A DNA stretch of 64,000 nucleotides, from the sequence record PV654397.1; one strand, written 5' to 3'. Positions 42,769 to 62,643 of the stretch are shown here, in pieces (positions within the stretch are counted from its first letter, which is position 1; each line of letters begins with the position of its first letter). The notes under the pieces were generated by a model. It was not told the DNA's origin and searched no databases. It saw only the letters and a list, made by a program, of their open reading frames with translations. A program made the translations under genes and the position numbers.

Positions 42769-43170
42769 TTACAGTCCTAAGATAGTGCGTGCTTCGTTAC
42801 GTTCCGTGCACAGCTGCATGATGTGAGCAAGTAAGTCCTTGCTAATGTATCCGGTGTTCATAGCTTCACGAATAGATACATCATAAGCACCGAACCCCGT
42901 GCGAACGATACGCACATCATTCAGGTTAGTATTATAGATACCGCCGAGATCAACGGCTTCGAATACTACATCAACAGAATATTCATTGTTGCCATCGTGG
43001 AAGTTTTCCAGTGCAATAGTATTGGATACCGCCCAACGTTTGCAGTTTCCAATGATGCGGCACTGTTCCGGTTGGATAGTGCCATTACTTACAGCGTACT
43101 CCAGTGCATCTTTACCAAAAGTCCGAGCCAGTACTAAAACGTCAGCGAAGGAAGTGATTGAGAAGGTCAT
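42769..43170 (-). CDS. Early-region hypothetical protein
   Basis: Start trimmed to MTFSI after the cassette RBS. Confidence 0.75.
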   Translation of the reverse strand: MTFSITSFADVLVLARTFGKDALEYAVSNGTIQPEQCRIIGNCKRWAVSNTIALENFHDGNNEYSVDVVFEAVDLGGIYNTNLNDVRIVRTGFGAYDVSIREAMNTGYISKDLLAHIMQLCTERNEARTILGL

Positions 43171-43255
43171 GATAAAACTCCTTAATTTAGGAGGGAGAAC
43201 CATTTCCCCCTCTCTATGTAAAACATTATACATGAATCTAAGTACTATGCAAGTA

Positions 43256-43591
43256 CTATTTCATTTTAATACCTGGATTCAGGTAACGGTGAGAGCCGTA
43301 TTCTGGAGAGGTTTCGGTCCAGTACAGTAAATCGATAGTCCCTTTAGCGTTAATCTTATCTACCAGCTTATTCATCTTAGCGTATACTACATCAGCATCG
43401 ATGCGTTTAAAGCCAGTAGCTTTAGTGAAGTAGTAATGATTTACTTCGCTATCGTTAAGGATATACCGAGAACCGTCAGCCGTTTGTGCGACAATGAATG
43501 AGAATGATACTTTACGATCAAGGCCGTCGCAGTATACAGATGAATCATTGGTACGGATGAAAGCTTTAACGATATCGATTGAAGTACTCAT
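43256..43591 (-). CDS. Early-region hypothetical protein
   Basis: ORF with own promoter and RBS. Confidence 0.75.
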   Translation of the reverse strand: MSTSIDIVKAFIRTNDSSVYCDGLDRKVSFSFIVAQTADGSRYILNDSEVNHYYFTKATGFKRIDADVVYAKMNKLVDKINAKGTIDLLYWTETSPEYGSHRYLNPGIKMK

Positions 43592-43752
43592 GGTGAATCT
43601 CCTAACTTTGTGGGCCGTCGCACCGTTGCCGCCCTACGAGATACATTATTGCAGTACTGATATACTTTGTCAATACTTTTTTATTAATAGTTTTAGTTCC
43701 ACCAGCAGATAGTTACTCACCGTTATTAACTATATATTTTGGATACACCTAT

Positions 43753-43814
43753 GCACCCTGTGGGCTAGTTTTTGTCTATGCGTATATAATAGCAAAGGGA
43801 CTGACCGGAGTCAA
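43753..43814 (-). ncRNA. ORF-less promoter + CTAGCCCACAGGGTGC element (copy 1), candidate sRNA
   Basis: TTGACT-N17-TATTAT with the -35 inside a terminator hairpin; motif at 43753-43768. Confidence 0.45.
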
Positions 43815-43826
43815 TCCCTTTTTTTA
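43795..43826. terminator. Repeated terminator hairpin GGGACTGAC-CGGA-GTCAATCCC (also at about 46055, 49334 and a variant at 53352)
   Basis: 9-bp stem with T-runs; identical copies directly after minus-strand gene stops. Confidence 0.75.
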
Positions 43827-43837
43827 TTCTTTTTTTG

Positions 43838-44038
43838 TTAGATGATTCTCCAATCATCAACGATCATGGTAAGATACCGAACCAGTGATTCGAGTGATTC
43901 GTGTTCTCGATAGTCTGCCGCTCCACCAGCGGTACAAGTACAGCCGATTAAGCCGTTTTGTAGTTCCTGGATCTTTACGTCGATCTGGTTGGCTTTAGCT
44001 TCTTTCAGTACTTCAACCAGGGCGATAGCGATAGACAT
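43838..44038 (-). CDS. Early-region hypothetical protein
   Basis: Cassette-driven ORF. Confidence 0.7.
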   Translation of the reverse strand: MSIAIALVEVLKEAKANQIDVKIQELQNGLIGCTCTAGGAADYREHESLESLVRYLTMIVDDWRII

Positions 44039-44128
44039 AATGTTTTACTCCAAACTATTGGCGGGAGAACTATTCCCCCGCTCTATGTAAAACATTATAC
44101 ATTACTGGTTAGTACTGTCAAATAGTTT

Positions 44129-44386
44129 TTATGAAATATCTTCGATGTAGTCGGCCCATTTCATTTTTTCAGTACTGTCAATGGCTACCGGATTATTTGG
44201 ATCAAACCATTCACCATCACCGCAATACATACCCACGGCTACGGTTTTATAGCCATCCTGGGCCGTACACCACGACATTGCACGATAGATATGGCCTTTA
44301 ACTGGTTGCAGTACTGGTAACGTTTTATGGTCTTCTACGTAGGCCATAGCTTGAGGATTTACCCGATATTGTGTGAACTGATCCAT
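44129..44386 (-). CDS. Early-region hypothetical protein
   Basis: Cassette-driven ORF. Confidence 0.7.
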   Translation of the reverse strand: MDQFTQYRVNPQAMAYVEDHKTLPVLQPVKGHIYRAMSWCTAQDGYKTVAVGMYCGDGEWFDPNNPVAIDSTEKMKWADYIEDIS

Positions 44387-44462
44387 TATGTTTCCCCTTG
44401 TAGTTAGTAAAGTTATTACATCAGTACTATCAAGCTATGTCAATAGTACTGAAATAAAACTT

Positions 44463-44687
44463 TTAGATTAGATTATTGAGGCCGTCAATGGTAGACTCAC
44501 TTTCTTCTTTCTCCCATTGTCGGTAGTACTTCCATGCTTCATGATAGGTGGCGATTAGTTCATCTTTTTGATCCTGGTTACATGCCAGTACTGAATCACG
44601 GTGAGCGGTGTTATAGATAGAATCGAATGATTTCTTCTCTTCTGCCAGGTTAGCTACTTCCCGCATCAGTTCATCAAAGTTAGCCAT
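44463..44687 (-). CDS. Early-region hypothetical protein
   Basis: Cassette-driven ORF. Confidence 0.7.
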   Translation of the reverse strand: MANFDELMREVANLAEEKKSFDSIYNTAHRDSVLACNQDQKDELIATYHEAWKYYRQWEKEESESTIDGLNNLI

Positions 44688-44754
44688 TTTATTACTCCTT
44701 TTAGTGGGGGAGGATATCTCCCCCTATGCAAAACATTATACTTTGTTTTAGTTA

Positions 44755-45018
44755 TTATGCAAGTACTTTTTTCATATAAACATTAAATTCTACACCGCCG
44801 TAACCTTCCACGATGATATGTTTTGCGTTATCACGTTTGCACATAGTGAAACCGTTGTTGATATGTTCTGCATTTTCCAGGGCGACATCACCGATAGCGG
44901 CACATACGGCACTAATAACAGTATTCCGCAAAGTACTGGTATCATTGGCGGTCATAGTAGTTTGCAGTACTACGTTGTCGTATACGTGTGCATTGATAGT
45001 GATTTCGATAGTGTTCAT
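44755..45018 (-). CDS. Early-region hypothetical protein
   Basis: Start trimmed to MNTIEI. Confidence 0.7.
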   Translation of the reverse strand: MNTIEITINAHVYDNVVLQTTMTANDTSTLRNTVISAVCAAIGDVALENAEHINNGFTMCKRDNAKHIIVEGYGGVEFNVYMKKVLA

Positions 45019-45105
45019 GGTGTATCTCCTGGACTTGAGGGGAAACCATTTCCCCCTCTCGATATAAAACATTATACGTTAATCTAACTACAATGCAAGT
45101 ACTTT

Positions 45106-45297
45106 TTAAATTTTATTTCCGATATAGTCCGGTCTATTCTTTTCGGTCATACGCTTTGCTAATGTCTGCATATGGCTTATAGCGTTCAAGGTGTCTTCCT
45201 CCAGGGATGAATCAAGATAATCAGGATCATTCTTCACCTTGCAATGATTATGATATCGTAGTACTGCCAGTACTTTTTTAACTTCTTCTACTGTCAT
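45106..45297 (-). CDS. Early-region hypothetical protein
   Basis: Coupled to the upstream ORF. Confidence 0.65.
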   Translation of the reverse strand: MTVEEVKKVLAVLRYHNHCKVKNDPDYLDSSLEEDTLNAISHMQTLAKRMTEKNRPDYIGNKI

Positions 45298-45566
45298 AAT
45301 AAGTACCCCACTTCGTTAGCTTTCAGGTTAGTATCAATCATCAGTGGATTTTTGTAGTTCACAAAACGATTAGTTTTTTCGATAGCAAATCCCATATAAT
45401 CCAGCTTACTAACAGTACATTCATTCTTAAAAACTTCTTTCGCTGCATCGATTGCTGATTGCATGGATAACCGACCATCTAAATTAATGTTTCCAAATGA
45501 TCCACCAGCAGAAGTAGGATTACCGTTCATATCTTTAATGATCATAGTAGCGGAGTAGCTAGACAT
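45294..45566 (-). CDS. Early-region hypothetical protein
   Basis: Cassette-driven ORF. Confidence 0.7.
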   Translation of the reverse strand: MSSYSATMIIKDMNGNPTSAGGSFGNINLDGRLSMQSAIDAAKEVFKNECTVSKLDYMGFAIEKTNRFVNYKNPLMIDTNLKANEVGYLL

Positions 45567-45650
45567 AATTTTGTTTCCTTTTAGTATCGGGGAGAACTAT
45601 TCTCCCCTTGATGTAAACTATTATACAGTACTGGTATACTTTGTCAATAC

Positions 45651-45872
45651 TTAATTACGGTTAAAATGATATGTGCCTTTATCATCCTGTACGCCCCATA
45701 CTGATTTACCATCAACACCAGTGAAGCCGGATTGTAATTCAATATGGAAACCATTATTATCAACTACAAAAACTTTTTTATTTTCATCCCGATAACATTG
45801 ATATTCTGAATCAACATTAAAGGCCGCATCATTCAGTAGATTGGAAGCGTAAATGCAAGTCATTGTAGTCAT
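45651..45872 (-). CDS. Early-region hypothetical protein
   Basis: Cassette-driven ORF. Confidence 0.7.
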   Translation of the reverse strand: MTTMTCIYASNLLNDAAFNVDSEYQCYRDENKKVFVVDNNGFHIELQSGFTGVDGKSVWGVQDDKGTYHFNRN

Positions 45873-46007
45873 GATTTTATTCCTTATTGCCAGGGAGAAC
45901 CGTTCCCCCTCTCGATATAAAACATTATACTTGATTCTAAGTACAATGCAAGTACTTTTTAAAAAATAGTTTTCAGTACTGAATACTTATATAATAGATA
46001 CACTTCC

Positions 46008-46074
46008 GCACCCTATGGGTCAGTGAGTTATCTCTCAATGGATATATAATAGCAAAGGGACTGACCGGAGTCAA
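46008..46074 (-). ncRNA. ORF-less promoter + CCCATAGGGTGC element (copy 2)
   Basis: Same architecture as copy 1. Confidence 0.45.
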
Positions 46075-46092
46075 TCCCTTTTTTAATCTTTT

Positions 46093-46677
46093 TTATCGTG
46101 TTACCTTACTTGCTGCCACATCACGCTTTTTATAGTACTGATTCCAGATATTGCTGGTTAAACCGTAATCAAGTACTTTAATAAGTCCATTACGATCCTG
46201 GCCGATATTCTGTTTTCTGATATCTCTTATCGTTAGTGTTGATAATGTATCATCAACGTGTTGTAGTGCATCAGCAAAGCGGTGCTGGCGTTCGATTGCA
46301 TTACGTTTAATATTGTACTTTAATTCATTGCACGCGTTTACGTGCTTCACACTGCCTTTGCTTGCAGTACTCAACCGATCCATAACGATAAACATATTAT
46401 CAGGATCGCATAAATGCATATGCACCTTTGCAAAGTACTGTTTCAACTGAGGGCGGTCATAGTCTAAAAAATTCCATACCTTACATTCAGTTTCATTTTG
46501 TTCTACACCCGCATCACAATTCGCGACCTTAATCACTAACCGATCATTTAAAGCGAATACTATACGGGAAGAACCAGCACCGATGATCTCCAGGCCAGCT
46601 AACCGACAAGCTGAAAGGATCTCTTTGTTGGTTTCCATTTCTGACAGTGTACGGATGAATTTAGTATAATTACGCAT
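46093..46677 (-). CDS. Ser/Thr protein kinase-like protein
   Basis: IGAGSSRIV glycine loop, VIKVA, QNETE helix C, FIVMDRL hinge, DIRKQNIG catalytic loop, VLDYG. Confidence 0.85.
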   Translation of the reverse strand: MRNYTKFIRTLSEMETNKEILSACRLAGLEIIGAGSSRIVFALNDRLVIKVANCDAGVEQNETECKVWNFLDYDRPQLKQYFAKVHMHLCDPDNMFIVMDRLSTASKGSVKHVNACNELKYNIKRNAIERQHRFADALQHVDDTLSTLTIRDIRKQNIGQDRNGLIKVLDYGLTSNIWNQYYKKRDVAASKVTR

Positions 46678-46708
46678 TGCATGTTCTCCTTGAGTTAATG
46701 AAACTATA

Positions 46709-46951
46709 TTACAGTACTTTACTATCAATGGCAACTACTTTTTTAACATTAACGGCGTGGATCACTTCCTTCGTGTTTTTAGTACTGAATACTTTCGCCG
46801 CTCCTTGTTCGACCGTGATACGATAGCGACCATTAACATCAACCATATTAATAAAGTCCGGCGTGCTGAATGGTGTTGTTTTACATTTGAGTACTGTTAA
46901 CAGTTCCACCAGCGATGTAGTTTCTTTGATACGTTTTTCTAAAGTAATCAT
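46709..46951 (-). CDS. Early-region hypothetical protein
   Basis: Start trimmed to MITLE; upstream module duplicated at 47227-47284. Confidence 0.7.
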   Translation of the reverse strand: MITLEKRIKETTSLVELLTVLKCKTTPFSTPDFINMVDVNGRYRITVEQGAAKVFSTKNTKEVIHAVNVKKVVAIDSKVL

Positions 46952-47008
46952 TTTGTTTCCCCCGTGTTGGTATGTACATATAGTACTAAAACATTTGAGT
47001 ACTGTCAA

Positions 47009-47227
47009 TTAGATAATATTATATTTCTTAAAATAAAATGCGTCTTGTGTTGGTTGATACTCGATACCGTTACCGTTATTGACTTCAACTAATAAACCTT
47101 TGTCAATTAGTTTTTTAATAGTACGATACCCTTGTTGAAAATTGGTAAAATGTGAATCATTACGAAAGGTATAACCGTGCTTAACTGCTTCATCAATAGT
47201 TTTCTTTTCGATTTTAGATAATTTCAT
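47009..47227 (-). CDS. Early-region hypothetical protein (possible winged-helix-like)
   Basis: Start trimmed to MKLSK; TIKKLIDKGLLVEV. Confidence 0.65.
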   Translation of the reverse strand: MKLSKIEKKTIDEAVKHGYTFRNDSHFTNFQQGYRTIKKLIDKGLLVEVNNGNGIEYQPTQDAFYFKKYNII

Positions 47228-47280
47228 TTTGTTTCTCCCGTGTTGGTATGTGTACATAGTACTAAAACAATTGAGTACTG

Positions 47281-47535
47281 TCAACGTGATATTAGTTTTA
47301 TTTTCTTATTGTATTGTTGATGCTCATAAAGGTTTATCTTTCCTGTGTTCTCGATTACTATCCTGTTGTTAGTGTCCACGTCGATTACACGCAGTTTCCC
47401 GTTGCTTAACTTCCTAGGTAATAGGTTACCATTAATAAACTCATTAGCAAGCTGTACGGCCTTTGTGATGATTCTCTGAGGTGCTTTATAGTGTACCCGT
47501 AAGATGTTATCTTTATATAGTTGAACCTTAATCAT
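47281..47535 (-). CDS. Early-region hypothetical protein
   Basis: ORF with RBS. Confidence 0.7.
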   Translation of the reverse strand: MIKVQLYKDNILRVHYKAPQRIITKAVQLANEFINGNLLPRKLSNGKLRVIDVDTNNRIVIENTGKINLYEHQQYNKKIKLISR

Positions 47536-47596
47536 TTTGTTTGTCCTATAAAAAAGGCGGGAACTGATCCCGCCGTGTTGTTAGTACTGCAAGTTA

Positions 47597-48001
47597 TTAG
47601 ATAACCTGGCGGCGTTTACTGTATACTGTTACACGATTACCCTTACGATCATGTCGGATCTCTTTCTGGTTGCGAATCAGTTCACTTGGACGCTTAAGGT
47701 TTGCCAGGTGATCCGCGTGAGTCCATGCGGTGTGGTTTACCTGTACTTTGATATCAGAATCAGCGATAAACTCATCTTGTGCGTCAAGTATTGCCGCCAG
47801 CATATCCGCTCGTTTTAGTTCTGCTGCTGTCAGTACTGGCTCAGGTGAATTCACAATATCAGAGATTTCTTTGAACTGTACGGCCCAGCGTTGACCTTTC
47901 GGTGCTGTCGTTCCCATGTCTTTAAATGCTGCTCCTTCCTCGCGTGCAACAATACGGGCAGCTTCACGGGTAGCGTAGAATTTAGTAATCATGGTATACA
48001 T
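47597..48001 (-). CDS. Early-region protein, paralog of 61283-61549
   Basis: Shared FxATRE.AR..AR..GA.FKDMG..G.RWA and DRKGNRVTVY. Confidence 0.8.
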   Translation of the reverse strand: MYTMITKFYATREAARIVAREEGAAFKDMGTTAPKGQRWAVQFKEISDIVNSPEPVLTAAELKRADMLAAILDAQDEFIADSDIKVQVNHTAWTHADHLANLKRPSELIRNQKEIRHDRKGNRVTVYSKRRQVI

Positions 48002-48087
48002 CCTATTAGTTAAGTTAGTACTACAAGTTAGAGTCTATTATAAAGTACTATCTGGGCAATGTCAAATAGTACTTTAAATGGATTCTA

Positions 48088-48411
48088 TTACATGTCTTTC
48101 TTACGTTTTACATCGTGGTAGCGAACTGTTATTTCTTTGTTGATCTCTTCCTCGATGCGGTGAATAACTTTTTCTTTCGGGTTGAAACCTATTACAGTTT
48201 CCTTAATGATTTCTAAACCCGTGTACTCGCCTTGTGTGCCGTAACCGTATGTAAAGGTTTCGTGTCCCAGGTCTTCCCAGCGATCACCAATCAATGCGGA
48301 CACGTAGCAGGAGTGGTAAGTATTGCCGTGGCTATCAGTCCACCGATTAACTTTAATGTCAAAGGAGGTTACAATTTTCAGTTCTACTTTCTGGGTAAGG
48401 ATCATAGCCAT
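48088..48411 (-). CDS. Early-region protein, paralog of 55287-55610
   Basis: Shared RWTDSxGNTYHSCxVS and FTYGY. Confidence 0.8.
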   Translation of the reverse strand: MAMILTQKVELKIVTSFDIKVNRWTDSHGNTYHSCYVSALIGDRWEDLGHETFTYGYGTQGEYTGLEIIKETVIGFNPKEKVIHRIEEEINKEITVRYHDVKRKKDM

Positions 48412-48498
48412 TTTTATTTCTCTCTCTTTGTTAGGAGGGGAACCATTCCCCTCGCTTGATGTAAACTATTATACAGTACTAAGATACTTTGTCAATAC

Positions 48499-48681
48499 TT
48501 ATTTTTTGGAAAGTTTACGCATTAATTCTACGCTTTCTTGTGAACGTTTTGCTACTTGACAAGCTGCATGGGCAGTAAACATTTTTGTATAGTCTGACGC
48601 TTTGCCACCGAACCGAGCGGCACGTTCACGGGCACTTGGAACTAATACGATTTCTTTCTTACAGATAGTGCACTTAGCCAT
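48499..48681 (-). CDS. Small putative Zn-binding protein
   Basis: CTIC...HAAC; start trimmed to MAKC. Confidence 0.65.
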   Translation of the reverse strand: MAKCTICKKEIVLVPSARERAARFGGKASDYTKMFTAHAACQVAKRSQESVELMRKLSKK

Positions 48682-48769
48682 TTTAATTTCTCTCTCTTTG
48701 TTAGGAGGGGAACCGTTTCCCCTCACTTGATGTAAACTATTATACAGTACTAAGATACTTTGTCAATAC

Positions 48770-54607: not shown

Positions 54608-54612
54608 ATTAA

Positions 54613-56605: not shown

Positions 56606-56632
56606 AAAAAAGCCCACCGTTTAAGGTGGGCT
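56606..56632 (-). terminator. Rho-independent terminator
   Basis: AGCCCACC-N6-GGTGGGCT plus T6. Confidence 0.8.
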
Positions 56633-56653
56633 AGTGATTCAGTACTTTAATTG

Positions 56654-57136
56654 TTATGCTTCAACTTTGCGATGAGCTTCGATCCATTCCTCGCGAGTCA
56701 TACCACTGGAGTTAATCGCGTCCAGTACTACCGCAATGCAGTTACCACGCACCGGAATCAGATATTCTTCCCCGTTGTCCAGTACTACCGCTACGCGTTC
56801 CTGAATCCATTTTTTGGCTTTTACTTCTGGCTTGTCTTCCCCATACTTAACCGCCAGGGCTTTTTGTGCCATCTCTGTAACTACTTCCAGATCCAATCCA
56901 ACTACTGCCGCCTGGATACTTTCAATTGTTGCTTGTAGTTCTGCTTCACGGGCCGCCTTTGCCGCTTCAATTTCTGCCGCTTTATTTGCTTGTAGTTCTT
57001 TCGCAGTACTGTACGCGATGTTAAAATTATTGCGTACCGCTTTCATGGTATCGTTATCCAGTTCAGCCAGGATCTCAGCCGCGACGTTAGTTTCATTTGC
57101 TACCAGTGCTTTGATGAATGATTTTACATTAGCCAT
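56654..57136 (-). CDS. Divergent H-NS/StpA-like protein
   Basis: Ala/Glu coiled coil, then VLDNGEEYLIPVRGNCIAVVLDAINSSGMTREEWI aligning by eye with H-NS [35 protein letters not shown]. Confidence 0.6.
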   Translation of the reverse strand: MANVKSFIKALVANETNVAAEILAELDNDTMKAVRNNFNIAYSTAKELQANKAAEIEAAKAAREAELQATIESIQAAVVGLDLEVVTEMAQKALAVKYGEDKPEVKAKKWIQERVAVVLDNGEEYLIPVRGNCIAVVLDAINSSGMTREEWIEAHRKVEA

Positions 57137-57341
57137 TTTATAAATCCTCAATTAAAGTTTAGTTTACGTTTATTAGTGTATCAAAGTTTTCTCGACGTGT
57201 CCAGTTTTTCGTTCGACTTACTGGCGGTCTACTTAGTGCTCCCCGTCTTGATGTAATACATTCTACGCTTTTCTGTGGTAATGTCAACTACTTTCTTAAA
57301 ACTATTTTCAAAGTATCTCAGTACTACGATACTACAAAAAC

Positions 57342-57363
57342 AAAAAAGCCCACCAGGTGGGCT
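57342..57363 (-). terminator. Rho-independent terminator
   Basis: AGCCCACCAGGTGGGCT palindrome plus T6. Confidence 0.7.
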
Positions 57364-57369
57364 ATGTAC

Positions 57370-57600
57370 TTAATCAGTGAGTAAAATATTAAACACTTTA
57401 CCATTTAACGTTATTGGTGCACTGCTACCAGGCTCAAGATCCGTTAATATACCTGCAATCGCTTTATCATTGGCGACCTTTCCAGTGTCCAACAGTACTA
57501 CAGTACTGATAAGATTAACGCTCGTTTCAATATCATAATGCACGGCGTTAAGTAGTTGTGTAGTACTGCTTTCGTTAAGTAAAACAATTCGCTTAGTCAT
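57370..57600 (-). CDS. Early-region hypothetical protein
   Basis: ORF. Confidence 0.65.
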   Translation of the reverse strand: MTKRIVLLNESSTTQLLNAVHYDIETSVNLISTVVLLDTGKVANDKAIAGILTDLEPGSSAPITLNGKVFNILLTD

Positions 57601-57621
57601 GATGTTACCCCGTAGTATCTA

Positions 57622-57921
57622 TCAACGGCAATTAATAACGCCGGTATGCGTTACTTTCTCAGTATCCATTACAGTGACCGAACCGCGTTTAGTACTGGCA
57701 TCATAATAAATTGTTGTGCTACCGTTTTCGTCTTCTTCATGGAACGGGCCGTTTTTAAATGCTTCCGGCTGGATCTCTAAATCCTTTAATACAATCTCGC
57801 CAGTTCTTTCATCGGTCATTGCAACAGTGCACTGAATGAATTTTTCACTACTTACATCTAATGACGCATTAACAGCGAAAGAGGAAACAGATAAAGCCAG
57901 GGCGATGATTGCAATTTTCAT
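57622..57921 (-). CDS. Exported/periplasmic protein
   Basis: Sec signal peptide MKIAIIALALSVSSFAVNA; two Cys. Confidence 0.75.
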   Translation of the reverse strand: MKIAIIALALSVSSFAVNASLDVSSEKFIQCTVAMTDERTGEIVLKDLEIQPEAFKNGPFHEEDENGSTTIYYDASTKRGSVTVMDTEKVTHTGVINCR

Positions 57922-58005
57922 TTGATTATCCTTAGTTACCAGGGGGAACCGCTCCCCCTTGCGATGTAAAATATTATACAGTACTAAAAACTATTATCAA
58001 GTACT

Positions 58006-58242
58006 TTATGATTTTTTATAAAACATTTCAGCCGTGATATTTTTACCCGTTGGTTGTACTTTATCCAGAATTTTTTGATGCCCAGGCCGTCCAAATGAAT
58101 ATGATCCGTAAACCGTAAACCAGTAGTTACCCTCAGTGTTTACATGTACAGCACAATAGGGTACACCCCGCGATTCATCACTAGTAAAGTGTACTACCGT
58201 TCCCGTTACATTCGCAGACGTTGATTTGATTTGTTCAAGCAT
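58006..58242 (-). CDS. Early-region hypothetical protein
   Basis: Cassette-driven ORF. Confidence 0.7.
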   Translation of the reverse strand: MLEQIKSTSANVTGTVVHFTSDESRGVPYCAVHVNTEGNYWFTVYGSYSFGRPGHQKILDKVQPTGKNITAEMFYKKS

Positions 58243-58351
58243 TTTCTTATTCCTTAGTTACCAGGGGAACCGCTCCCCCTATGCAAAACATTATACGCGT
58301 TTAAAAACTAATTGCAAGTATTTTAATAAAAAGTATTTGAAAAAATAGTTG

Positions 58352-58481
58352 TTGACAAGTGCATCCAGTACTGGCATAATTACTACATCAAGACGAAACA
58401 GTCACTAACCCACCGGGTGCCGAGATCCGTCTATTAAATGATTCAGTACTGAAAAAGTAACGGGGAGTTATTATCTCCCCG
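58352..58481 (+). ncRNA. Plus-strand promoter + CTAACCCACCGGGTGC element (copy 6), about 100-nt candidate sRNA
   Basis: TTGACA(58352)-N17-CATAAT; motif 58405-58420; hairpin CGGGGAG/CTCCCCG at 58461-58481; no ORF. Confidence 0.5.
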
Positions 58482-58486
58482 CGTTG

Positions 58487-58708
58487 TTATTTTGTAAGGT
58501 ATAAACAGAAGTCACCTTTATTTGCTACGCCGCCAGTGTAACGCGAGGAATAGTTAGAAACGTCCTGGACTTCTGCTATTACCAGGGTATCATCATTCAA
58601 TTCGTCGCAGAAGCAAACGGCTGGATCTTGTACGCCGATTTTGTCAGCATGTTCCCGCATAGATTTAACCAGTGCTTCCAGTTGGGAAAGAGTAGTGATA
58701 TTAGCCAT
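58487..58708 (-). CDS. Early-region hypothetical protein
   Basis: Start trimmed to MANIT. Confidence 0.7.
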   Translation of the reverse strand: MANITTLSQLEALVKSMREHADKIGVQDPAVCFCDELNDDTLVIAEVQDVSNYSSRYTGGVANKGDFCLYLTK

Positions 58709-58792
58709 TGTATTTTCCTCATTACCAGGGAGAACCATTTCTCCCTTTGATGTAAACCATTATACAGTACTGAAAACTAATTGCAAGTACTT

Positions 58793-58981
58793 TTAATTAA
58801 ATTCCATAAAATCATTTTCAACGTGCACAACAATCTGATTATTTTTAAAGGACGCAGAAAACTCTATACAATCATAAACCGCTTTTTCTGTTACCAGACT
58901 ATGAGCACCAATCGGATTAATTGGGGATTGAATTGTTTCAATCTCGTTACCTTGTTCATTAACGATTAAAATATTAAACAT
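58793..58981 (-). CDS. Early-region hypothetical protein
   Basis: Promoter-driven ORF. Confidence 0.6.
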   Translation of the reverse strand: MFNILIVNEQGNEIETIQSPINPIGAHSLVTEKAVYDCIEFSASFKNNQIVVHVENDFMEFN

Positions 58982-59020
58982 TGCCGTTACTCCTGGATAG
59001 TGTTAACTCGATATAAAGTA

Positions 59021-59203
59021 TTATACGCCTTTATTGCTTAGTGTCCAGTGATCACGCATCATACGCCCCGCACGATCCCAGCTAGTAGGCATGGGTATGC
59101 CTTGCAATTCGTTAGGGGAGATCTCGACCTCGATCCCTACATCAATAACAGTCATTCCAGCTTTCGCAGCTTGCTCGCGGATAACCTCAGATAATGTTGT
59201 CAT
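59021..59203 (-). CDS. Early-region hypothetical protein
   Basis: Promoter-driven ORF; upstream module duplicated at 58990-59020 and 59212-59250. Confidence 0.6.
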   Translation of the reverse strand: MTTLSEVIREQAAKAGMTVIDVGIEVEISPNELQGIPMPTSWDRAGRMMRDHWTLSNKGV

Positions 59204-59277
59204 GATTAAAGCTCCTGGATAGTGTTAACTCGATATAAAGTATTATACAGTACTGAAAACTAATTGCAAGTACTTTT

Positions 59278-59538
59278 TCAATATTGTTTGTCGTCGTCTT
59301 CCTCGATGAATTGACCGACGAAATGATCTACTTTCGCTTTGAGGCTTTTATAATCTTCTTCTACTTCCTTTAAACGTTCCTGGTAGTATTCCAGTGCTTG
59401 AATATACGCCGCCTCAGCAGTTTTTGCACGCATAGCTAAATTCATTCCACGCGTTTCATCAAATAGCCAATAACCATCGGTGCAATGACTGATAGATAAT
59501 GATTTACTTAGTGCTGTATAGCTAATTACTTTACTCAT
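59278..59538 (-). CDS. Early-region hypothetical protein
   Basis: Cassette-driven ORF with C-terminal coiled coil. Confidence 0.7.
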   Translation of the reverse strand: MSKVISYTALSKSLSISHCTDGYWLFDETRGMNLAMRAKTAEAAYIQALEYYQERLKEVEEDYKSLKAKVDHFVGQFIEEDDDKQY

Positions 59539-59595
59539 TAGATAACCCTCAGTAAAGGCGGGAACTATTACCCGCCATTATCTCAGTACTGAATA

Positions 59596-59835
59596 TTACA
59601 TTCCAACCATTGCAGCACGGATCGCAGTAGTGCTATACTTAAAGCCGTCCGGCGTTGTAGTAGTACCGTTGGCTTTTAATCTGCGGTACATACATTCCGC
59701 AGCAATATCTTTAGTTCTACTTTGTGCGATGCAACTTTGAGCAAGCCGATACAATGACTCACCGTTATTAATCCAAAGGCTTACATTCCAATGAGTTTTG
59801 TTTTTGTGACCGTTGTAAGTTTTAGTACTAGCCAT
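59596..59835 (-). CDS. Early-region protein, paralog of 61638-61877
   Basis: GHKNKTHWNVSLWINN...TPDGFKYSTTAIRAAMVGM. Confidence 0.8.
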   Translation of the reverse strand: MASTKTYNGHKNKTHWNVSLWINNGESLYRLAQSCIAQSRTKDIAAECMYRRLKANGTTTTPDGFKYSTTAIRAAMVGM

Positions 59836-59925
59836 TTTTAAATCCTCGTTTGAGCGGGGAACCACTCCCCGCCTCGATATAAAGTATTATACGCTTTTAA
59901 ACTTAGTTTGCAAGTACTTTTTAAA

Positions 59926-60537
59926 TTAATATTCGATTGATTCCACTACGCCATCAATAACATTGAATTGATACTCGTTACCCTCAATCAGTGCCGTAAT
60001 GTTTTCAGTAGTGAATTGATCCTCATATGCATTCTCTAAATCACGGTACAACTTGCGGGACAATTCACGAATAGTTTCAGTGAGTAGTTCCTCAAGCTCA
60101 TTAACTAACGTTTCTTGTTTTGCGGTTAAATCAGTGTAAGCCGATTCAATGTACCCGCTTACCGTGTTTTCGTGTGCGTAGCGAGAGTGTGAACGTTCTA
60201 CACTCATTGCCAAATCATCTTCATTCAACAAGTGACGGATAGAACGATATTTCGTTAACGCTTTAATCTTGCGTAAAAACTTCACTGCGTCCACGCTGTC
60301 AGTACTGATTGATGCACCGTCACCCTGGGACCAAAAACCGCTGAATTGTATTTCAGCTTCATTAATGCCATATTCCGGTAGTACTGTTTCTTTATAGTAT
60401 TCAATTTCACTTTCAGAAAAATAATTGTCGTTTGAGTTTTTTTCACGTTCCCGAACCAGTTCGATAGCTGACGTTTGTTGTTCTGCGTTCAATTCAGAAA
60501 AAGCCATAACATAAGTAGTAGTAGTGATAGTTTTCAT
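59926..60537 (-). CDS. Acidic phage hypothetical protein
   Basis: 203 aa, FSGFWSQGDGAS motif. Confidence 0.8.
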   Translation of the reverse strand: MKTITTTTYVMAFSELNAEQQTSAIELVREREKNSNDNYFSESEIEYYKETVLPEYGINEAEIQFSGFWSQGDGASISTDSVDAVKFLRKIKALTKYRSIRHLLNEDDLAMSVERSHSRYAHENTVSGYIESAYTDLTAKQETLVNELEELLTETIRELSRKLYRDLENAYEDQFTTENITALIEGNEYQFNVIDGVVESIEY

Positions 60538-60605
60538 TTTGTAACCCTCATTCAGTAGTTGATGTAAGTATTATACGCTTTTAAAAACATTTGTCAAACT
60601 ATTTT

Positions 60606-60680
60606 ATCAGGGGAGTTTTTCGTGTGCCTTACTCCTGGGCTACTTAACGGGAAGTTACTTATTTCGTTCCCCGTCCTGAT
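60606..60680 (-). ncRNA. Candidate three-way-junction small RNA (copy 2, 75 nt)
   Basis: Near-identical to 49115-49187 with stems preserved; own promoter. Confidence 0.55.
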
Positions 60681-60761
60681 GTAAAACATTATACGCCTTT
60701 AAACATAGTTTGCAAGTACTTTTTAAAAATAGTTTTCAGTACTGAATATTAAAAAAAAGTA

Positions 60762-60934
60762 TTGACAGCATTATCAAGTACTGGCATAATATACCCCATG
60801 ACAACAGCTAACCCACCGGGTGCACAATTGTAACTATACTAAACTAATTTTGCTATAGATACACTCCCGCACCCTATGGGCTACGGCTTATCTGCCAATG
60901 AATACATTATGCCAGTACTGACAAAATAAGTCAA
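60762..60934. promoter_or_regulatory. Convergent promoter pair, each followed by the CCCANNGGGTGC element (copies 7 and 8)
   Basis: + TTGACA(60762)-N17-CATAAT, motif 60808-60823; - TTGACT(60934)-N17-CATAAT, motif 60869-60884. Confidence 0.65.
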
Positions 60935-60964
60935 TACCGGCAATTGTAAAGATTTGTAAACTGC

Positions 60965-61195
60965 TTATACTGCAATCGCGTCCAGGCTGTAATAATAATA
61001 AGTGCCGTATTGGTGTACTTTATTACCTTTTATTTCAGTACTGAATGAATCCGAACGATTTGCATATGATGTTAATTTAAAGTACTTTGATTTGCTGATA
61101 CGTTGCCATACACCACAGATCCGCTGTAAGTAAGTAGTTTTATTCGTGGTAGTATCTTTTACGGTTTTAACTTCAGTCATATACATATTAGTCAT
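60965..61195 (-). CDS. Early-region hypothetical protein
   Basis: Cassette-driven ORF. Confidence 0.7.
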   Translation of the reverse strand: MTNMYMTEVKTVKDTTTNKTTYLQRICGVWQRISKSKYFKLTSYANRSDSFSTEIKGNKVHQYGTYYYYSLDAIAV

Positions 61196-61282
61196 TTTTA
61201 TTACTCCAGGTTATAGGCGGGAAGTGTTCCCGCTCTCGATGTAAAACATTATACGCCATTAAACATAGTTTGCAAGTACTTT

Positions 61283-61549
61283 TTATTCAAGTACTGCAAT
61301 CTTTTTTGTACGGTACACGGTCACGCGGTTGCCCTTTCGGTCGAGCTTTATTTCTACCACTCGACGCGATACACTATCGGGACTTTTTAAGGCCGCTAAC
61401 CAGTACTGTAATGATCTGGCGGTACTACGCTTTACAATGGCCCAACGTTTACCACGTTCCGATTGTACGCCCATATCTTTAAACGTTGCCCCGTCCTGGC
61501 GTGCGGCGATCCGAGCTTGTTCACGCGTCGCAAAATACTTAATATTCAT
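61283..61549 (-). CDS. Early-region protein, paralog of 47597-48001
   Basis: FATREQARIAARQDGATFKDMG...DRKGNRVTVY. Confidence 0.8.
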   Translation of the reverse strand: MNIKYFATREQARIAARQDGATFKDMGVQSERGKRWAIVKRSTARSLQYWLAALKSPDSVSRRVVEIKLDRKGNRVTVYRTKKIAVLE

Positions 61550-61637
61550 GCTGTTGCCCTTATCGTTGGTGTATGAATAAAACACTATTATAAAGTACTA
61601 TCCCCGTGCAATAGTACTTTAAATAAATTCTATTCTA

Positions 61638-61877
61638 TTACATTCCAACCATCGCCGCACGGATCGCAGTAGTGCTATATTTGAATCCGTCCGGTGTTTT
61701 ATCTTGTCCAGTCTGTTCTAAAAATAACATCATATGACGGGCCGCATCATTGCGATTAGTGTTGTCGTTAATAAAATCCAGGGCCAACCGATACAATCCC
61801 TCATCGTTATTAATCCACAGGCTTACATTCCAATGAGTTTTGTTTTTGTGACCTAAGAACATTTTTGATTTAGCCAT
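61638..61877 (-). CDS. Early-region protein, paralog of 59596-59835
   Basis: GHKNKTHWNVSLWINN...TPDGFKYSTTAIRAAMVGM. Confidence 0.8.
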   Translation of the reverse strand: MAKSKMFLGHKNKTHWNVSLWINNDEGLYRLALDFINDNTNRNDAARHMMLFLEQTGQDKTPDGFKYSTTAIRAAMVGM

Positions 61878-61970
61878 TTTTTTAATCCTCTTATATAGTG
61901 GGGAACTATTCCCCACCTGATGTAAAACATTATACGCTTTTAAACATAGTTTGCAAGTACTTTATTAAAC

Positions 61971-62333
61971 TTATTTGTAAATTTTGCCACTGTCAGCCCA
62001 TACCAGGAAACGAGGCATATTATCCCATGCATCTTGTTTTAAGTTTAAGCCGTGCAATTCCTCAGTTGTTGCCATCCCTGGTACTGGCTTACTACACACC
62101 GCGAAATTTTCGCCCATATACTGATAAACCATCGTCAAATCATTTGAGATCATTATATGGATCATTGAATCCAGCATCAAAGTAGCGGCGTATTGTTCAC
62201 GCTTAAGCGGCAACATTGCAATAAGTTCCCGATAAGCTGCAATGTGAATTTTTACCGTTTCAGCCGGAAGACCTTTCATCTCATCGCGGAAGTTTACCAG
62301 GTTAAGCATGATTTTATTGATTTGAGTCGCCAT
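61971..62333 (-). CDS. Early-region hypothetical protein
   Basis: Start trimmed to MATQI. Confidence 0.75.
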   Translation of the reverse strand: MATQINKIMLNLVNFRDEMKGLPAETVKIHIAAYRELIAMLPLKREQYAATLMLDSMIHIMISNDLTMVYQYMGENFAVCSKPVPGMATTEELHGLNLKQDAWDNMPRFLVWADSGKIYK

Positions 62334-62643
62334 CGTTTTAATCTCTCTTAATGTGTAGCGGGAAGTGTTCCCGCTCTCGATGTAAAACATTATACGCTTT
62401 TATCAGTACGGTGCAAGTACTTTCTACAAATACTTTTAAAATAGTTTTCTTTCTATATAGGAGTACTATTATTCAGTACTGAATCAATCCACCAAATCAT
62501 CCCTATACCCCGTAAAACGGCCTCAGACGCATTCTAACGCATTAATACACCTAAGCTATACATTTGCACCACTCCCAACAATCCAGGGCGTTACGGGCCG
62601 TTTAAACGCGTTAAATTATTTTCAATTATTTTGTTTTTAGGTA

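What the first reader, a model, noticed from the sequence alone, without database searches (positions are those of the whole stretch)
43170..62420. Modular expression cassette (promoter + GGGGAA-N3-6-TTCCCC hairpin + RBS) reused for more than 25 unrelated early genes
Seen: nearly every early ORF is preceded by TTGACA/TTGCAW-N16/17-TATAAT, a conserved ..TTTTACATC start, a 7-9 bp hairpin at about +5 to +25, and an AGGA(G) RBS. Stem variants are compensatory (GGGGAGAA/TTCTCCCC, GCGGGAA/TTCCCGC, GTGGGGAA/TTCCCCAC, GAGGGGAA/TTCCCCTC). Some cassettes are near-identical over 60-90 bp (about 48414-48501 vs 48683-48771; 46951-47008 vs 47227-47284). Inference: the hairpin is a 5'-end stabiliser against RppH/RNase E or a phage nuclease, or a palindromic operator for shut-off. 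The repeats may also act as recombination joints for swapping single genes in and out, like an integron without an integrase.
Basis: partly seen in the sequence, partly recalled or inferred. Interest (0 to 1): 0.7.

Follow-up and report, generated by a model that had tools for sequence, protein, structure and literature searches.

The report
Promoter-hairpin gene cassettes in phage terminal repeat
The 21.7-kb terminal repeat of this jumbo E. coli phage is built from about 40 repeated host-type promoter modules, 25 of them carrying a conserved RNA hairpin, each driving a different small unknown gene; close relatives differ by whole gene-plus-cassette units, a layout already described as PeSLs in T4-like phages.

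Summary
The window is the last 64 kb of Escherichia phage WPEC5, an Asteriusvirus-type jumbo phage. The flagged stretch lies inside the right copy of its 21,662-bp direct terminal repeat (window 42339-64000).

On the minus strand, 25 genes carry the full cassette: A-tract, TTGACA or TTGCAA, 16-17 nt, TATAAT, conserved (G/A)TTTTACAT, a 7-9-bp G-first hairpin, Shine-Dalgarno, ATG. Another 16 genes have the same promoter without the hairpin. A covariance model finds 62 of its 64 hits in the 381-kb genome inside the two repeat copies.

The stems covary. Internal mismatches are G·U and never A·C, so the hairpin most likely acts as sense-strand RNA, not as a DNA operator. It has no U-run, whereas eight true terminators in the same region do.

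Relatives differ by single gene-plus-cassette units. Junction homologies are 46-99 nt, and one junction was checked and is chimeric. The same cassettes occur in the Salmonella jumbo phage Munch, and a block of them has moved into a Vequintavirinae phage.

The closest known kind is the PeSL. Here the hairpin is always transcribed and the cassettes are confined to the terminal repeat. The transcription start and the proposed mRNA-stabilising role are untested.

The parts
42339..64000 (.). Right copy of the 21,662-bp direct terminal repeat (DTR) of phage WPEC5. It holds every cassette described here.
   Evidence: 100% identical to record 1-21662. The homologous 21,525-bp region is annotated 'Direct Terminal Repeats' in vB_Ec-M-J. 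A 20,993-bp repeat was confirmed by restriction digests in fEgEco12 (PMC13070987).
62338..62425 (-). Hairpin cassette (stem AGCGGGAA / TTCCCGCT, loop cac) for gene 61971-62333
   Evidence: R1 hit 70.9 bits; fold -12.5 kcal/mol
61879..61965 (-). Hairpin cassette (GTGGGGAA / TTCCCCAC) for gene 61638-61877
   Evidence: R1 88.3 bits
61197..61284 (-). Hairpin cassette (GCGGGAA / TTCCCGC) for gene 60965-61195
   Evidence: R1 81.6 bits
59835..59922 (-). Hairpin cassette (GCGGGGA / TCCCCGC) for gene 59596-59835
   Evidence: R1 81.7 bits
58708..58795 (-). Hairpin cassette (AGGGAGAA / TTCTCCCT) for gene 58487-58711
   Evidence: R1 95.2 bits
58243..58326 (-). Hairpin cassette (AGGGG..CCCCT type) for gene 58006-58242
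   Evidence: R1 70.5 bits
57922..58009 (-). Hairpin cassette (AGGGGGA / TCCCCCT) for gene 57622-57921
   Evidence: R1 83.5 bits
55842..55929 (-). Hairpin cassette (GGGGAGAA / TTCTCCCC) for gene 55700-55843. A 94% identical copy is in the Vequintavirinae phage W70.
   Evidence: R1 91.8 bits
54329..54416 (-). Hairpin cassette (GGGGAGAA / TTCTCCCC) for gene 54182-54328
   Evidence: R1 92.2 bits
54102..54187 (-). Hairpin cassette (AAGGGGAA / TTCCCCTT) for gene 53848-54099. This gene-plus-cassette unit is missing from four relatives.
   Evidence: R1 75.8 bits
53761..53848 (-). Hairpin cassette (GGGGAGAA / TTCTCCCC) for operon 53379-53761. It supplies the downstream half of the chimeric junction seen in relatives.
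   Evidence: R1 93.1 bits; alignment A3
53169..53256 (-). Hairpin cassette (AGGGGAAA / TTTCCCCT) for gene 52827-53168
   Evidence: R1 85.6 bits
52733..52821 (-). Hairpin cassette (GGGGAGAA / TTCTCCCC, 5-nt loop) for gene 52519-52731
   Evidence: R1 76.8 bits
50632..50717 (-). Hairpin cassette (AGGGGAA / TTCCCCT) with a degenerate -10, for gene 50443-50631
   Evidence: R1 60.7 bits
50356..50443 (-). Hairpin cassette (GGGGAGAA / TTCTCCCC) for gene 50063-50359. The gene is absent from one relative and replaced in four.
   Evidence: R1 87.7 bits
49988..50074 (-). Hairpin cassette (GGGGAGAA / TTCTCCCC) for gene 49777-49989
   Evidence: R1 81.5 bits
49692..49778 (-). Hairpin cassette (extended stem CGGAAGGGGAA / TTCCCCTCCG) for genes 49371-49690
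   Evidence: R1 72.8 bits; -16.4 kcal/mol
48686..48774 (-). Hairpin cassette (GAGGGGAA / TTCCCCTC) for gene 48499-48681. Near-identical to the next cassette.
   Evidence: R1 68.6 bits; repeat families D6 and D10
48416..48503 (-). Hairpin cassette (GAGGGGAA / TTCCCCTC) for gene 48088-48411
   Evidence: R1 71.7 bits
45873..45960 (-). Hairpin cassette (GGGGGAA / TTCTCCC, with an internal G·U pair) for gene 45651-45872
   Evidence: R1 84.8 bits
45570..45655 (-). Hairpin cassette (GGGGAGAA / TTCTCCCC) for genes 45106-45566. Relatives carry an extra gene inserted here with 99 nt of overlap.
   Evidence: R1 75.3 bits
45018..45107 (-). Hairpin cassette (GAGGGGGAAA / TTTCCCCTC) for gene 44755-45018
   Evidence: R1 76.4 bits
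44687..44771 (-). Hairpin cassette (GGGGGAG / CTCCCCC) for gene 44463-44687
   Evidence: R1 72 bits
44043..44130 (-). Hairpin cassette (GCGGGGGAA / TTCTCCCGC) for gene 43838-44038. The unit is missing from BF17.
   Evidence: R1 66.8 bits
43173..43261 (-). Hairpin cassette (GAGGGGGAA / TTCTCCCTC) for gene 42769-43170
   Evidence: R1 78.8 bits
52167..52256 (-). Example of the 16 sister promoters without a hairpin (TTGACA, 16 nt, TATAAT, unstructured 44-nt leader), for gene 52023-52166. The others precede the genes that start at 44386, 46677, 46951, 47227, 47992, 49045, 51068, 52436, 55610, 56156, 56378, 58981, 59203, 60537 and 61549.
   Evidence: mean -1.8 kcal/mol, z about 0
60598..60724 (-). 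Cassette promoter followed by a branched leader of about 80 nt, closed by AUCAGG / CCUGAU, then a second perfect promoter for gene 59926-60537. A second copy lies at 49107-49231.
   Evidence: R1 57.3 and 52.5 bits; folds -19.4 and -21.0 kcal/mol, z -2.3 and -3.9; repeat family D12
47556..47574 (-). One of the true intrinsic terminators (GC stem followed by a T-run) that split the cassette array into blocks. The others are at 58460-58482, 57347-57363 and 56611-56632.
43794..43821 (-). A 12-bp hairpin that overlaps the -35 of a TTGACT, 17 nt, TATTAT promoter (classic PeSL layout). It has a T-run on the plus strand. Four copies: 43794-43821, 46054-46081, 49332-49359, 53349-53376.
   Evidence: (family D7)

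Best explanation
These are the early-gene ('host take-over') expression cassettes of the phage's direct terminal repeat. They are a PeSL-like system.

Each cassette is a near-consensus promoter for the host sigma-70 RNA polymerase: an upstream A-tract, TTGACA or TTGCAA, 16-17 nt, then TATAAT. The transcript is inferred to begin at the invariant A of the conserved ACAU, 8 nt after TATAAT. In 25 cassettes the RNA folds, 1-6 nt from that inferred 5' end, into a 7-9-bp hairpin. Its purine arm comes first, with a GC-rich base and two A-U pairs under a 3-5-nt loop. An unpaired Shine-Dalgarno sequence follows, with the ATG 15-23 nt beyond the hairpin in 22 of the 25.

The hairpin acts as sense-strand RNA. 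Its most likely job (inferred) is a 5'-proximal structural cap. Such a cap would slow 5'-end-dependent decay and keep the ribosome-binding site in the same context whatever gene follows. On read-through transcripts from upstream promoters it would also act as a 3' barrier for the upstream message.

Independently of that, the 60-100 bp of cassette DNA repeated about 40 times serves as homology for recombination. That recombination deletes, inserts and replaces single genes. It operates within Asteriusvirus, in the related Salmonella phage Munch lineage, and across to an unrelated Vequintavirinae phage.

Shown here: the anatomy, confinement to the terminal repeat, structural conservation, strand asymmetry, and cassette-bounded gene turnover. 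Inferred: the transcription start, early timing, stabilisation, and the recombination pathway.
For: Anatomy and counts.

Confinement to the terminal repeat: model R1 gives 64 hits at E <= 0.01 in the 381-kb record. Of these, 62 lie in the two repeat copies, all on one strand, and 2 weak hits lie elsewhere. In Salmonella phage Munch, 20 of 22 hits lie in the first 20.5 kb.

Structure under selection:
- 92% of cells are paired. There are 87 double-change cells in 5 of 8 pairs. None of 500 shuffles reaches that, and all slid registers score lower.
- The 25 cassettes carry about 20 distinct hairpin sequences, with mean z -4.0.
- Between orthologous cassettes the 3' arm differs at 0.4% of sites and the -10 at 0.2%, against 7.2% in the promoter spacer and 3.3% in the adjacent coding DNA.

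RNA on the sense strand: among 44 unique hairpins the internal mismatches are G·T 7 times and A·C never. Nine of the 17 pair changes between orthologues switch between Watson-Crick and G·U.

Position tied to the 5' end: W70's own cassettes use a different -10 (TAAAYT) and different stems (GCCGCA/TGCGGC, GGCGGC/GCCGCC), yet the stem again begins 11-13 nt after the -10. The two long-leader variants close a helix starting at AUCAGG.

Not a classic terminator: none of the 25 passes the stem-plus-T-run scan, while eight true terminators in the same region do.

Recombination:
- Of 10 pure presence/absence events against five relatives, 7 show junction overlaps of 46-99 nt.
- At the junction in vB_Ec-M-J and fEgEco12, the part up to the -10 matches one flanking cassette and the leader, hairpin and SD match the other.
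- The W70 block is 71-88% identical to genes scattered over the WPEC5 repeat, in a different order. It holds all 8 AGTACT sites of the 10.8-kb locus and the only CAGTACTG in W70's 137 kb. That motif is the Asteriusvirus signature.

Early timing by analogy: in the related jumbo phage PA5oct the terminal-repeat genes are the highly transcribed early genes, and infection needs host RNA polymerase (PMC7318152).
Against: No 5'-end data exist for this phage. The RNA runs found are assembled contigs.

If transcription starts at the A two bases further upstream, the unpaired leader is 3-8 nt. From memory of Emory, Bouvet and Belasco (1992), a protective 5' stem-loop tolerates only about 2-4 unpaired nt, so even the preferred start leaves about half the cassettes borderline.

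Sixteen sister promoters do without the hairpin, so it is not needed for expression as such.

The strict purine-first polarity (97% purine in the 5' arm) and the near-invariant 3' arm are more than a generic hairpin would need. They hint at an additional sequence-specific constraint.

The covariation counts are inflated by shared descent of duplicated cassettes.

Indels that end between genes are also what selection alone would leave. Only the long junction homologies and the chimera argue specifically for cassette-to-cassette recombination.
Confidence: 0.6

Rival explanations
1. The hairpin is a transcription attenuator or terminator for transcripts arriving from upstream cassettes, as proposed and partly shown for PeSL stem-loops in RB49 and phi1. 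It would keep read-through from piling up along the array.
For: PeSL stem-loops of G(n)-loop-C(n) type cut lacZ expression as strongly as the rrnB T1 terminator (PMC2839356). Most cassettes here have no other terminator between genes. The stems are stable, -11 to -16 kcal/mol.
Against: No U-run follows any of the 25 hairpins, while eight hairpins with T-runs exist in the same repeat. The hairpin lies downstream of its own promoter, so it would attenuate its own transcript equally. Most PeSL stem-loops lie within or upstream of the promoter. The fixed distance from the -10, kept in W70's unrelated cassettes, is not needed by a terminator.
Confidence: 0.2
2. The hairpin is an RNA tag read by a trans-acting factor. 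This could be a phage protein that shuts early mRNAs off together, or protects them while host mRNA is destroyed, or a host RNA-binding protein.
For: The conserved features go beyond pairing. The 5' arm is 97% purine. The A-U closing pair is present in 106 of 111 distinct sequences. The 3' arm differs at only 0.4% of sites between orthologues. The element is confined to one regulon, the terminal repeat. It is conserved in a second jumbo-phage genus.
Against: Loop sequence and length are not conserved (3-5 nt, about 20 variants). Stem sequences differ. No candidate binding protein was looked for or found. Sixteen genes of the same regulon lack the tag.
Confidence: 0.15
3. The palindrome is a double-stranded DNA operator, at about +12 to +30, for a dimeric repressor that shuts early promoters off.
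For: It is an inverted repeat at a position typical of roadblock operators. The polarity and the 3' arm are conserved.
Against: Loops of 3, 4 and 5 nt change the half-site spacing. Half-site sequences differ within one genome and change in a compensatory way. G·T mismatches occur 7 times and A·C never, an asymmetry that has meaning only for one single strand. Sixteen promoters lack it.
Confidence: 0.06
4. The purine-rich first arm matters mainly as initial transcribed sequence that helps RNA polymerase escape from very strong consensus promoters. The complementary arm then merely neutralises a Shine-Dalgarno-like GGAG/GGGG tract in the leader.
For: The purine arm sits at about +6 to +13 of the inferred transcript in all 25 cassettes. 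It resembles a ribosome-binding site. The polarity is nearly absolute. From memory, not checked here: purine-rich initial transcribed sequences favour escape from the T5 N25 promoter.
Against: The hairpin-less sister promoters are equally consensus, several at 12/12, and have no such tract. Selection is visible on pairing itself.
Confidence: 0.1

Closest known systems
PeSLs (promoter-early stem-loops) of T4-like phages RB49/phi1, T4/PST and KVP40/nt-1 (Arbiol et al. 2010, PMC2839356; Comeau et al. 2014, PMC4122927)
   Same: Both are repeated intergenic modules of about 50-100 bp. Both combine an AT-rich upstream tract, a sigma-70-type early promoter, a purine-first stem-loop (G(n)-loop-C(n), or AG(n)A-loop-TC(n)T), a Shine-Dalgarno sequence and a start codon. 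[quoted passage not shown] Close relatives differ by genes bounded by the modules, explained by recombination between modules.
   Different: Here the stem-loop is always downstream of the inferred transcription start, inside the 5' leader at a fixed distance, and has no U-run. In PeSLs it mostly lies between or over the -35 and -10 boxes and acts as a terminator. Here the cassettes are confined to the direct terminal repeat of a jumbo phage outside the T4-like subfamily. Mini-circles were not tested. Four classic PeSL-like elements, with the hairpin over the -35, do exist in the same repeat (43794-43821 and three further copies).
Host-takeover module in the terminal redundancy of Bacillus phage SPO1, and the pre-early genes in the terminal repeat of T5 (own knowledge: Stewart et al. 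1998, Virology; T5 literature)
   Same: A long terminal repeat packed with many very small genes. Each gene, or each pair, has a strong early promoter for the host RNA polymerase and a strong ribosome-binding site. The genes are expressed first.
   Different: As far as I know, no conserved 5' leader hairpin and no cassette-level sequence repetition have been reported for those modules. Timing in this phage is inferred only by analogy with PA5oct (PMC7318152).
5'-terminal stabilising stem-loops of E. coli mRNAs such as ompA (own knowledge: Emory, Bouvet and Belasco 1992; RppH and the RNase E 5' sensor)
   Same: A stable hairpin within a few nucleotides of the 5' end, followed by an accessible ribosome-binding site.
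   Different: The 5' end is not mapped here. The inferred unpaired leader (1-6 nt) is borderline for protection. No half-life data exist.
Early-region cassettes of Vequintavirinae phage W70 (OP778610.1) and terminal-region cassettes of Salmonella jumbo phage Munch (MK268344.1)
   Same: The order of parts is the same: promoter, ACAU-type start, G-first hairpin 11-13 nt after the -10, Shine-Dalgarno, small gene. Munch has both the hairpin class and the hairpin-less class, with the AGTACT motifs in the same places. W70 holds two cassettes 94-95% identical to those of WPEC5.
   Different: W70's own cassettes use a TAAAYT -10, lack AGTACT, and have other stems. I found neither set described in the searched literature.
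Integron gene cassettes
   Same: Single promoterless-size genes move in and out at repeated boundary sequences.
   Different: There is no integrase and no attC-type site. The 44 PHROG families hit by the repeat's proteins are all unnamed. Each cassette carries its own promoter. The junctions look like plain homologous recombination.

Membership tests
PeSL (promoter-early stem-loop) regulatory cassettes | Repeated intergenic motif containing a sigma-70-like early promoter with an AT-rich tract upstream | tested here: met
   26 copies of the promoter core (family D1). 12 perfect 12/12 promoters, all on the minus strand. Alignment A1.
PeSL (promoter-early stem-loop) regulatory cassettes | Stable stem-loop, typically G-run, loop, C-run, forming part of the motif | tested here: met
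   25 cassettes with mean -13.6 kcal/mol and z -4.0. 44 unique G-first hairpins across relatives.
PeSL (promoter-early stem-loop) regulatory cassettes | Stem-loop placed within or upstream of the promoter, or just before the start site, so that it terminates only incoming transcription | tested here: not met
   The stem starts 11-14 nt after TATAAT in all 25, so it lies beyond any plausible start site. Only the four D7 elements have a hairpin over the -35.
PeSL (promoter-early stem-loop) regulatory cassettes | Stem-loop works as a terminator or attenuator | not testable with these tools
   The sequence shows no U-run after any of the 25 stems. Function needs a read-through assay.
PeSL (promoter-early stem-loop) regulatory cassettes | Concentrated in hyperplastic regions in front of orphan genes | tested here: met
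   62 of 64 model hits lie in the two terminal-repeat copies. Of the repeat's 56 small genes, 54 were scanned and hit 44 unnamed PHROG families.
PeSL (promoter-early stem-loop) regulatory cassettes | Insertions, deletions and replacements between close relatives are bounded by the elements, with recombination inside them | tested here: met
   Event list against five relatives, with overlaps of 46-99 nt. Chimeric junction.
PeSL (promoter-early stem-loop) regulatory cassettes | Formation of excised mini-circles | not testable with these tools
   Needs outward-facing PCR or long reads from lysates.
Intrinsic (Rho-independent) terminator | GC-rich stem followed at once by a U-run | tested here: not met
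   None of the 25 hairpins appears in the terminator scan on the minus strand. Eight other sites in the repeat do.
5'-terminal mRNA-stabilising stem-loop (ompA type) | Hairpin no more than a few unpaired nucleotides from the 5' end | tested here: inconclusive
   The unpaired leader is 1-6 nt if the start is the invariant A. The start itself is unmapped.
5'-terminal mRNA-stabilising stem-loop (ompA type) | Lengthens mRNA half-life in a way that depends on pairing | not testable with these tools
   Needs rifampicin-chase experiments with stem and compensatory mutants.
Lambda-type nut/boxB antitermination site | Hairpin with a conserved loop sequence read by an N-like protein, next to a boxA | tested here: not met
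   Loops vary in length (3-5 nt) and in sequence. No Rfam family matches anywhere in 42000-64000 at E <= 1.
Integron | Tyrosine-recombinase integrase with attI and attC sites | tested here: not met
   No named recombinase family among the top 25 of the 44 PHROG families hit by the repeat's proteins. The boundaries are promoter cassettes, not attC sites. The rest of the genome was not searched.

The most novel reading that the evidence does not exclude
The hairpin is a regulon-wide RNA mark. A phage or host factor would read it to protect the terminal-repeat early mRNAs, or switch them off, as a set. The shared promoter-hairpin module would also act as a common docking sequence that lets unrelated coliphage lineages (Asteriusvirus, Munch-like jumbo phages, Vequintavirinae) trade host-takeover genes by ordinary homologous recombination during co-infection. 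That would amount to a cross-family pool of ready-to-express gene cassettes.
Probability: 0.15. Interest if true: 0.7.

Novelty: new variant of a known kind. Interest (0 to 1): 0.45.

Why it matters
The result extends the PeSL idea beyond T4-like phages, to jumbo phages and to their terminal repeats. PeSLs are small promoter-plus-stem-loop modules that both express accessory genes and shuffle them. The Vequintavirinae block gives a clear case of a block of such cassettes crossing between unrelated phage subfamilies, with a sequence signature (AGTACT) that points to the donor.

The result also defines the probable immediate-early gene set of Asteriusvirus phages: 56 small genes, nearly all of unknown function. 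These phages are being proposed for therapy.

It supplies about 20 natural variants of a compact strong-promoter / 5'-hairpin / ribosome-binding-site module, next to matched hairpin-less versions. That is a ready-made natural experiment on what a 5' leader hairpin does for expression.

The concept itself is not new, and the hairpin's function remains untested.

Tried and rejected
The public record was searched through locus handles instead.
- RNA evidence: six RNA-library runs hold parts of the stretch, but all are kept as assembled contigs. Laying four of them gave short pieces that break at the repeats, no 5' ends, and possibly DNA carry-over. It therefore says nothing on start sites. The contig joints between cassettes (for example 48404 to 48675) are at most weak hints of natural variants.
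- Rfam: no family matches in 42000-64000 at E <= 1.
- MAFFT plus RNAalifold put the stem in a shifted register. I replaced this with a hand-set structure, a covariance model and its own alignment. That alignment leans towards the model, so I added a pairing-blind palindrome count.
- My first promoter heuristic missed TTGCAT-type -35 boxes and picked wrong -10s for several genes. Classification rests instead.
- The ungapped 'same upstream neighbour' count is crude and is not used as evidence.
- Considered and rejected: a classic terminator (no U-run), a DNA operator, a boxB-type site, RNase III sites (stems too short, from general knowledge), and T4 RegB-type GGAG cleavage sites (many stems lack GGAG).
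- Literature searches for these cassettes or for AGTACT enrichment in Asteriusvirus or rV5-like phages found nothing. Papers on CBB, Sharanji and fEgEco12 mention RpoD-like promoters or the terminal repeat, but no hairpin cassettes.

Full report
**What the window is.** Window 42000-63500 is 100% identical to Escherichia phage WPEC5 (PV654397.1, 381,326 bp) at 359326-380826, so the window is the last 64 kb of that record. WPEC5 belongs with the 121Q/PBECO4 jumbo coliphages of genus Asteriusvirus. Window 42339-64000 matches record 1-21662 at 100%. The flagged stretch therefore lies wholly inside the right copy of a 21,662-bp direct terminal repeat. The homologous region is annotated as a 21,525-bp direct terminal repeat in vB_Ec-M-J. 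A 20,993-bp repeat was confirmed by restriction digests in fEgEco12 (PMC13070987). Sharanji is reported to have one of 20,668 bp (PMC11895373). All real genes in the repeat are on the minus strand.

**Checking the observation.** Reading the sequence upstream of every annotated gene start and aligning the clear cases (A1) gives this cassette on the minus strand: AAAAAGTAC, then TTGCAA or TTGACA, 16 (sometimes 17) nt, TATAAT, (G/A)TTTTACAT(C/A/G), a hairpin, a linker, a Shine-Dalgarno sequence, ATG.
- A strict search finds 20 such sites on the minus strand of the repeat and one weak site on each strand in the other 42 kb.
- The consensus scan finds 12 perfect 12/12 promoters, all on the minus strand.
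- I count 25 cassettes with the hairpin. Their distance from -10 to ATG is 47-57 nt, mean energy is -13.6 kcal/mol and mean z is -4.0.
- I count 16 sister promoters that lack just the roughly 20-nt hairpin. Most have -10 to ATG distances of 25-45 nt, with energy -1.8 kcal/mol and z about 0.
- The genes are unrelated: three paralogous pairs among 56, and 44 unnamed PHROG families among the 54 scanned.

The correction is that about 60% of the promoters carry the hairpin, not nearly all of them.

**Distribution.** A covariance model of the cassette (R1) gives 64 hits at E <= 0.01 in the whole 381-kb record. There are 31 in each repeat copy, all on one strand, and two weak hits elsewhere. In six relatives and the window it finds 167 hits, all in the same orientation. 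In Salmonella jumbo phage Munch, 20 of 22 hits lie in the first 20.5 kb. Munch falls in a different genus cluster, with about 29% ANI to fEgEco12 according to PMC13070987. Both the hairpin class and the hairpin-less class are present there.

**Is the hairpin selected, and on which molecule?**
- On the model alignment (111 distinct sequences), 92% of cells pair. Five of eight pairs show changes on both sides (87 cells). No shuffle of 500 reaches this, and every slid register scores lower. Shared descent inflates these counts.
- A pairing-blind palindrome search gives 44 unique hairpins with stems of 5-9 bp and loops of 3, 4 or 5 nt. The 5' arm is 97% purine. Internal mismatches are G·T seven times and A·C never. 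Only one single strand, the sense strand, explains that asymmetry. It points to RNA, or formally to the non-template DNA strand.
- Between orthologous cassettes the -10 differs at 0.2% of sites, the 3' arm at 0.4%, the 5' arm at 2.8% (mostly Watson-Crick to G·U switches) and the promoter spacer at 7.2%. The adjacent coding DNA differs at 3.3%.

**What the hairpin is not.** None of the 25 is followed by a T-run. The same repeat holds four plain terminators with T-runs. It also holds four copies of a 12-bp hairpin that overlaps the -35 of a further promoter. Variable loop length, differing half-sites within one genome and the G·T asymmetry argue against a DNA operator. Variable loops argue against a boxB-type site, and Rfam finds nothing.

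**Position.** If transcription starts at the invariant A, 8 nt after TATAAT (a pyrimidine-purine step), the unpaired leader is 1-6 nt. The stem ends 15-23 nt before the ATG in 22 of the 25 cassettes, and the Shine-Dalgarno sequence is left free.

W70's own cassettes use another -10 (TAAAYT) and other stems, yet the stem again begins 11-13 nt after the -10. Two long-leader variants close a helix beginning at AUCAGG. This repeated closeness to the inferred 5' end is why I favour a 5'-proximal cap or insulator role. It is an inference.

No 5'-end data could be obtained, because the RNA runs found are contigs. By analogy, in the related jumbo phage PA5oct the terminal-repeat genes are the highly transcribed early genes and infection depends on host RNA polymerase (PMC7318152). 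RpoD-like promoters with UP-like elements in early regions were also noted for phage CBB (PMC5259590).

**Gene turnover.** I chained BLAST matches of the repeat against vB_Ec-M-J, BF17, fEgEco12, JP4 and PBECO4. This gives about 16 distinct differences, nearly all of them whole gene-plus-cassette units.
- Of ten pure presence/absence events, seven have the two flanks overlapping by 46-99 nt. The unit is therefore bracketed by direct cassette repeats of that length.
- For gene 53848-54099, which is missing from four relatives, the junction in two of them was aligned and is a chimera. The part up to the -10 matches the upstream cassette, and the leader, hairpin and Shine-Dalgarno match the downstream cassette.
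- Gene 50063-50359 is replaced by an unrelated gene in four relatives and deleted in one.

This is the pattern described for PeSLs (PMC2839356; PMC4122927).

**Across families.** Vequintavirinae phage W70 carries a block of about 1.9 kb that is 71-88% identical to genes scattered over the WPEC5 repeat, in a different order. The block includes two cassettes that score 70-88 bits against the model. All eight AGTACT sites of the 10.8-kb W70 locus lie in that block. So does the only CAGTACTG in W70's 137 kb, whereas WPEC5 has 252. That marks Asteriusvirus as the donor.

**Comparison with known systems.** The closest known kind is the PeSL. Shared features are the promoter, the purine-first stem-loop, the Shine-Dalgarno sequence, the location in front of orphan genes in plastic regions, and recombination at the modules. 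The differences are these: the stem-loop is always transcribed, sits at a fixed distance and has no U-run; the cassettes are confined to a terminal repeat; and the host phage is a jumbo phage outside the T4-like subfamily. The gene layout also resembles the host-takeover module of SPO1 and the pre-early region of T5 (own knowledge). I found no description of these cassettes for Asteriusvirus or rV5-like phages.

**Verdict.** This is a real, well-defined system and a new variant of a known kind. An RNA role for the hairpin is supported, the operator idea is disfavoured, and the stabiliser function is plausible but untested.

Noticed in passing
whole window; record PV654397.1: AGTACT occurs 260 times in the 64 kb, against about 21 expected from base composition. 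It is the commonest 6-nt palindrome by far, with 138 copies in the 21.7-kb repeat. CAGTACTG occurs 252 times in the 381-kb genome, against 3 for the reversed control word. It sits at two fixed places in the cassettes (just before the -35 and just before the -10) but is also frequent inside genes. No paper mentioning it was found.
   Followed up: partly
window 43764, 46019, 49302, 51658, 53314, 60880, 62769 (minus strand); 58409, 60812, 62699, 62916 (plus strand): Eleven short units without an open reading frame. Most have a recognisable sigma-70-type promoter, and seven have TTGAC(A/T), 17 nt, (C/T)AT(A/T)AT with TG before the -10. About 30-45 nt further on lies a conserved CC(N3-6)GGGTGC motif, most often CCCAYNGGGTGC. 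They look like a family of small non-coding RNAs or protein-binding sites, on both strands. Rfam has no match.
   Followed up: partly
window 43794-43821, 46054-46081, 49332-49359, 53349-53376: Four copies of a 12-bp hairpin (AAAGGGATTGACTCCGGTCAGTCCCTTT on the minus strand). It contains the -35 of a TTGACT, 17 nt, TATTAT promoter and is followed by a T-run on the plus strand. It is a composite terminator/promoter of the classic PeSL layout and closes blocks of cassettes. Tiny CDS annotated across these elements (for example 43765-43857, 45973-46074, 49244-49333, 53268-53369) are probably spurious.
   Followed up: partly
window 60598-60724 and 49107-49231; degenerate third copy about 57160-57296: A cassette promoter followed by a branched leader of about 80 nt (-19 to -21 kcal/mol), and then by a second perfect promoter. 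The leader is annotated as a 31-aa CDS (60594-60689). A homologous copy is in phage W70.
   Followed up: partly
window 62430-64000: The last 1.6 kb next to the genome end has no convincing gene. It holds several promoters on both strands, short tandem words (tagccgt / ccagac-type repeats around 63130-63210) and one more cassette-type promoter at 63593-63648. These may be packaging or end-recognition sequences.
   Followed up: no
window 41641-42241 and record 21965-26565 (L003): Just outside both repeat boundaries the architecture changes. There are arrays of 60-70-aa genes with overlapping stop and start codons, and no cassettes between them.
   Followed up: no
window 48404/48675, 50637/53792, 52745/53797, 53849/50370: Contigs from wastewater and 'whole organism' RNA libraries join different cassettes directly. 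One form lacks gene 48499-48681. These may be natural variants or assembly effects at repeats.
   Followed up: no
window 26392-26441: A run of 50 N, masked or an assembly gap.
   Followed up: no
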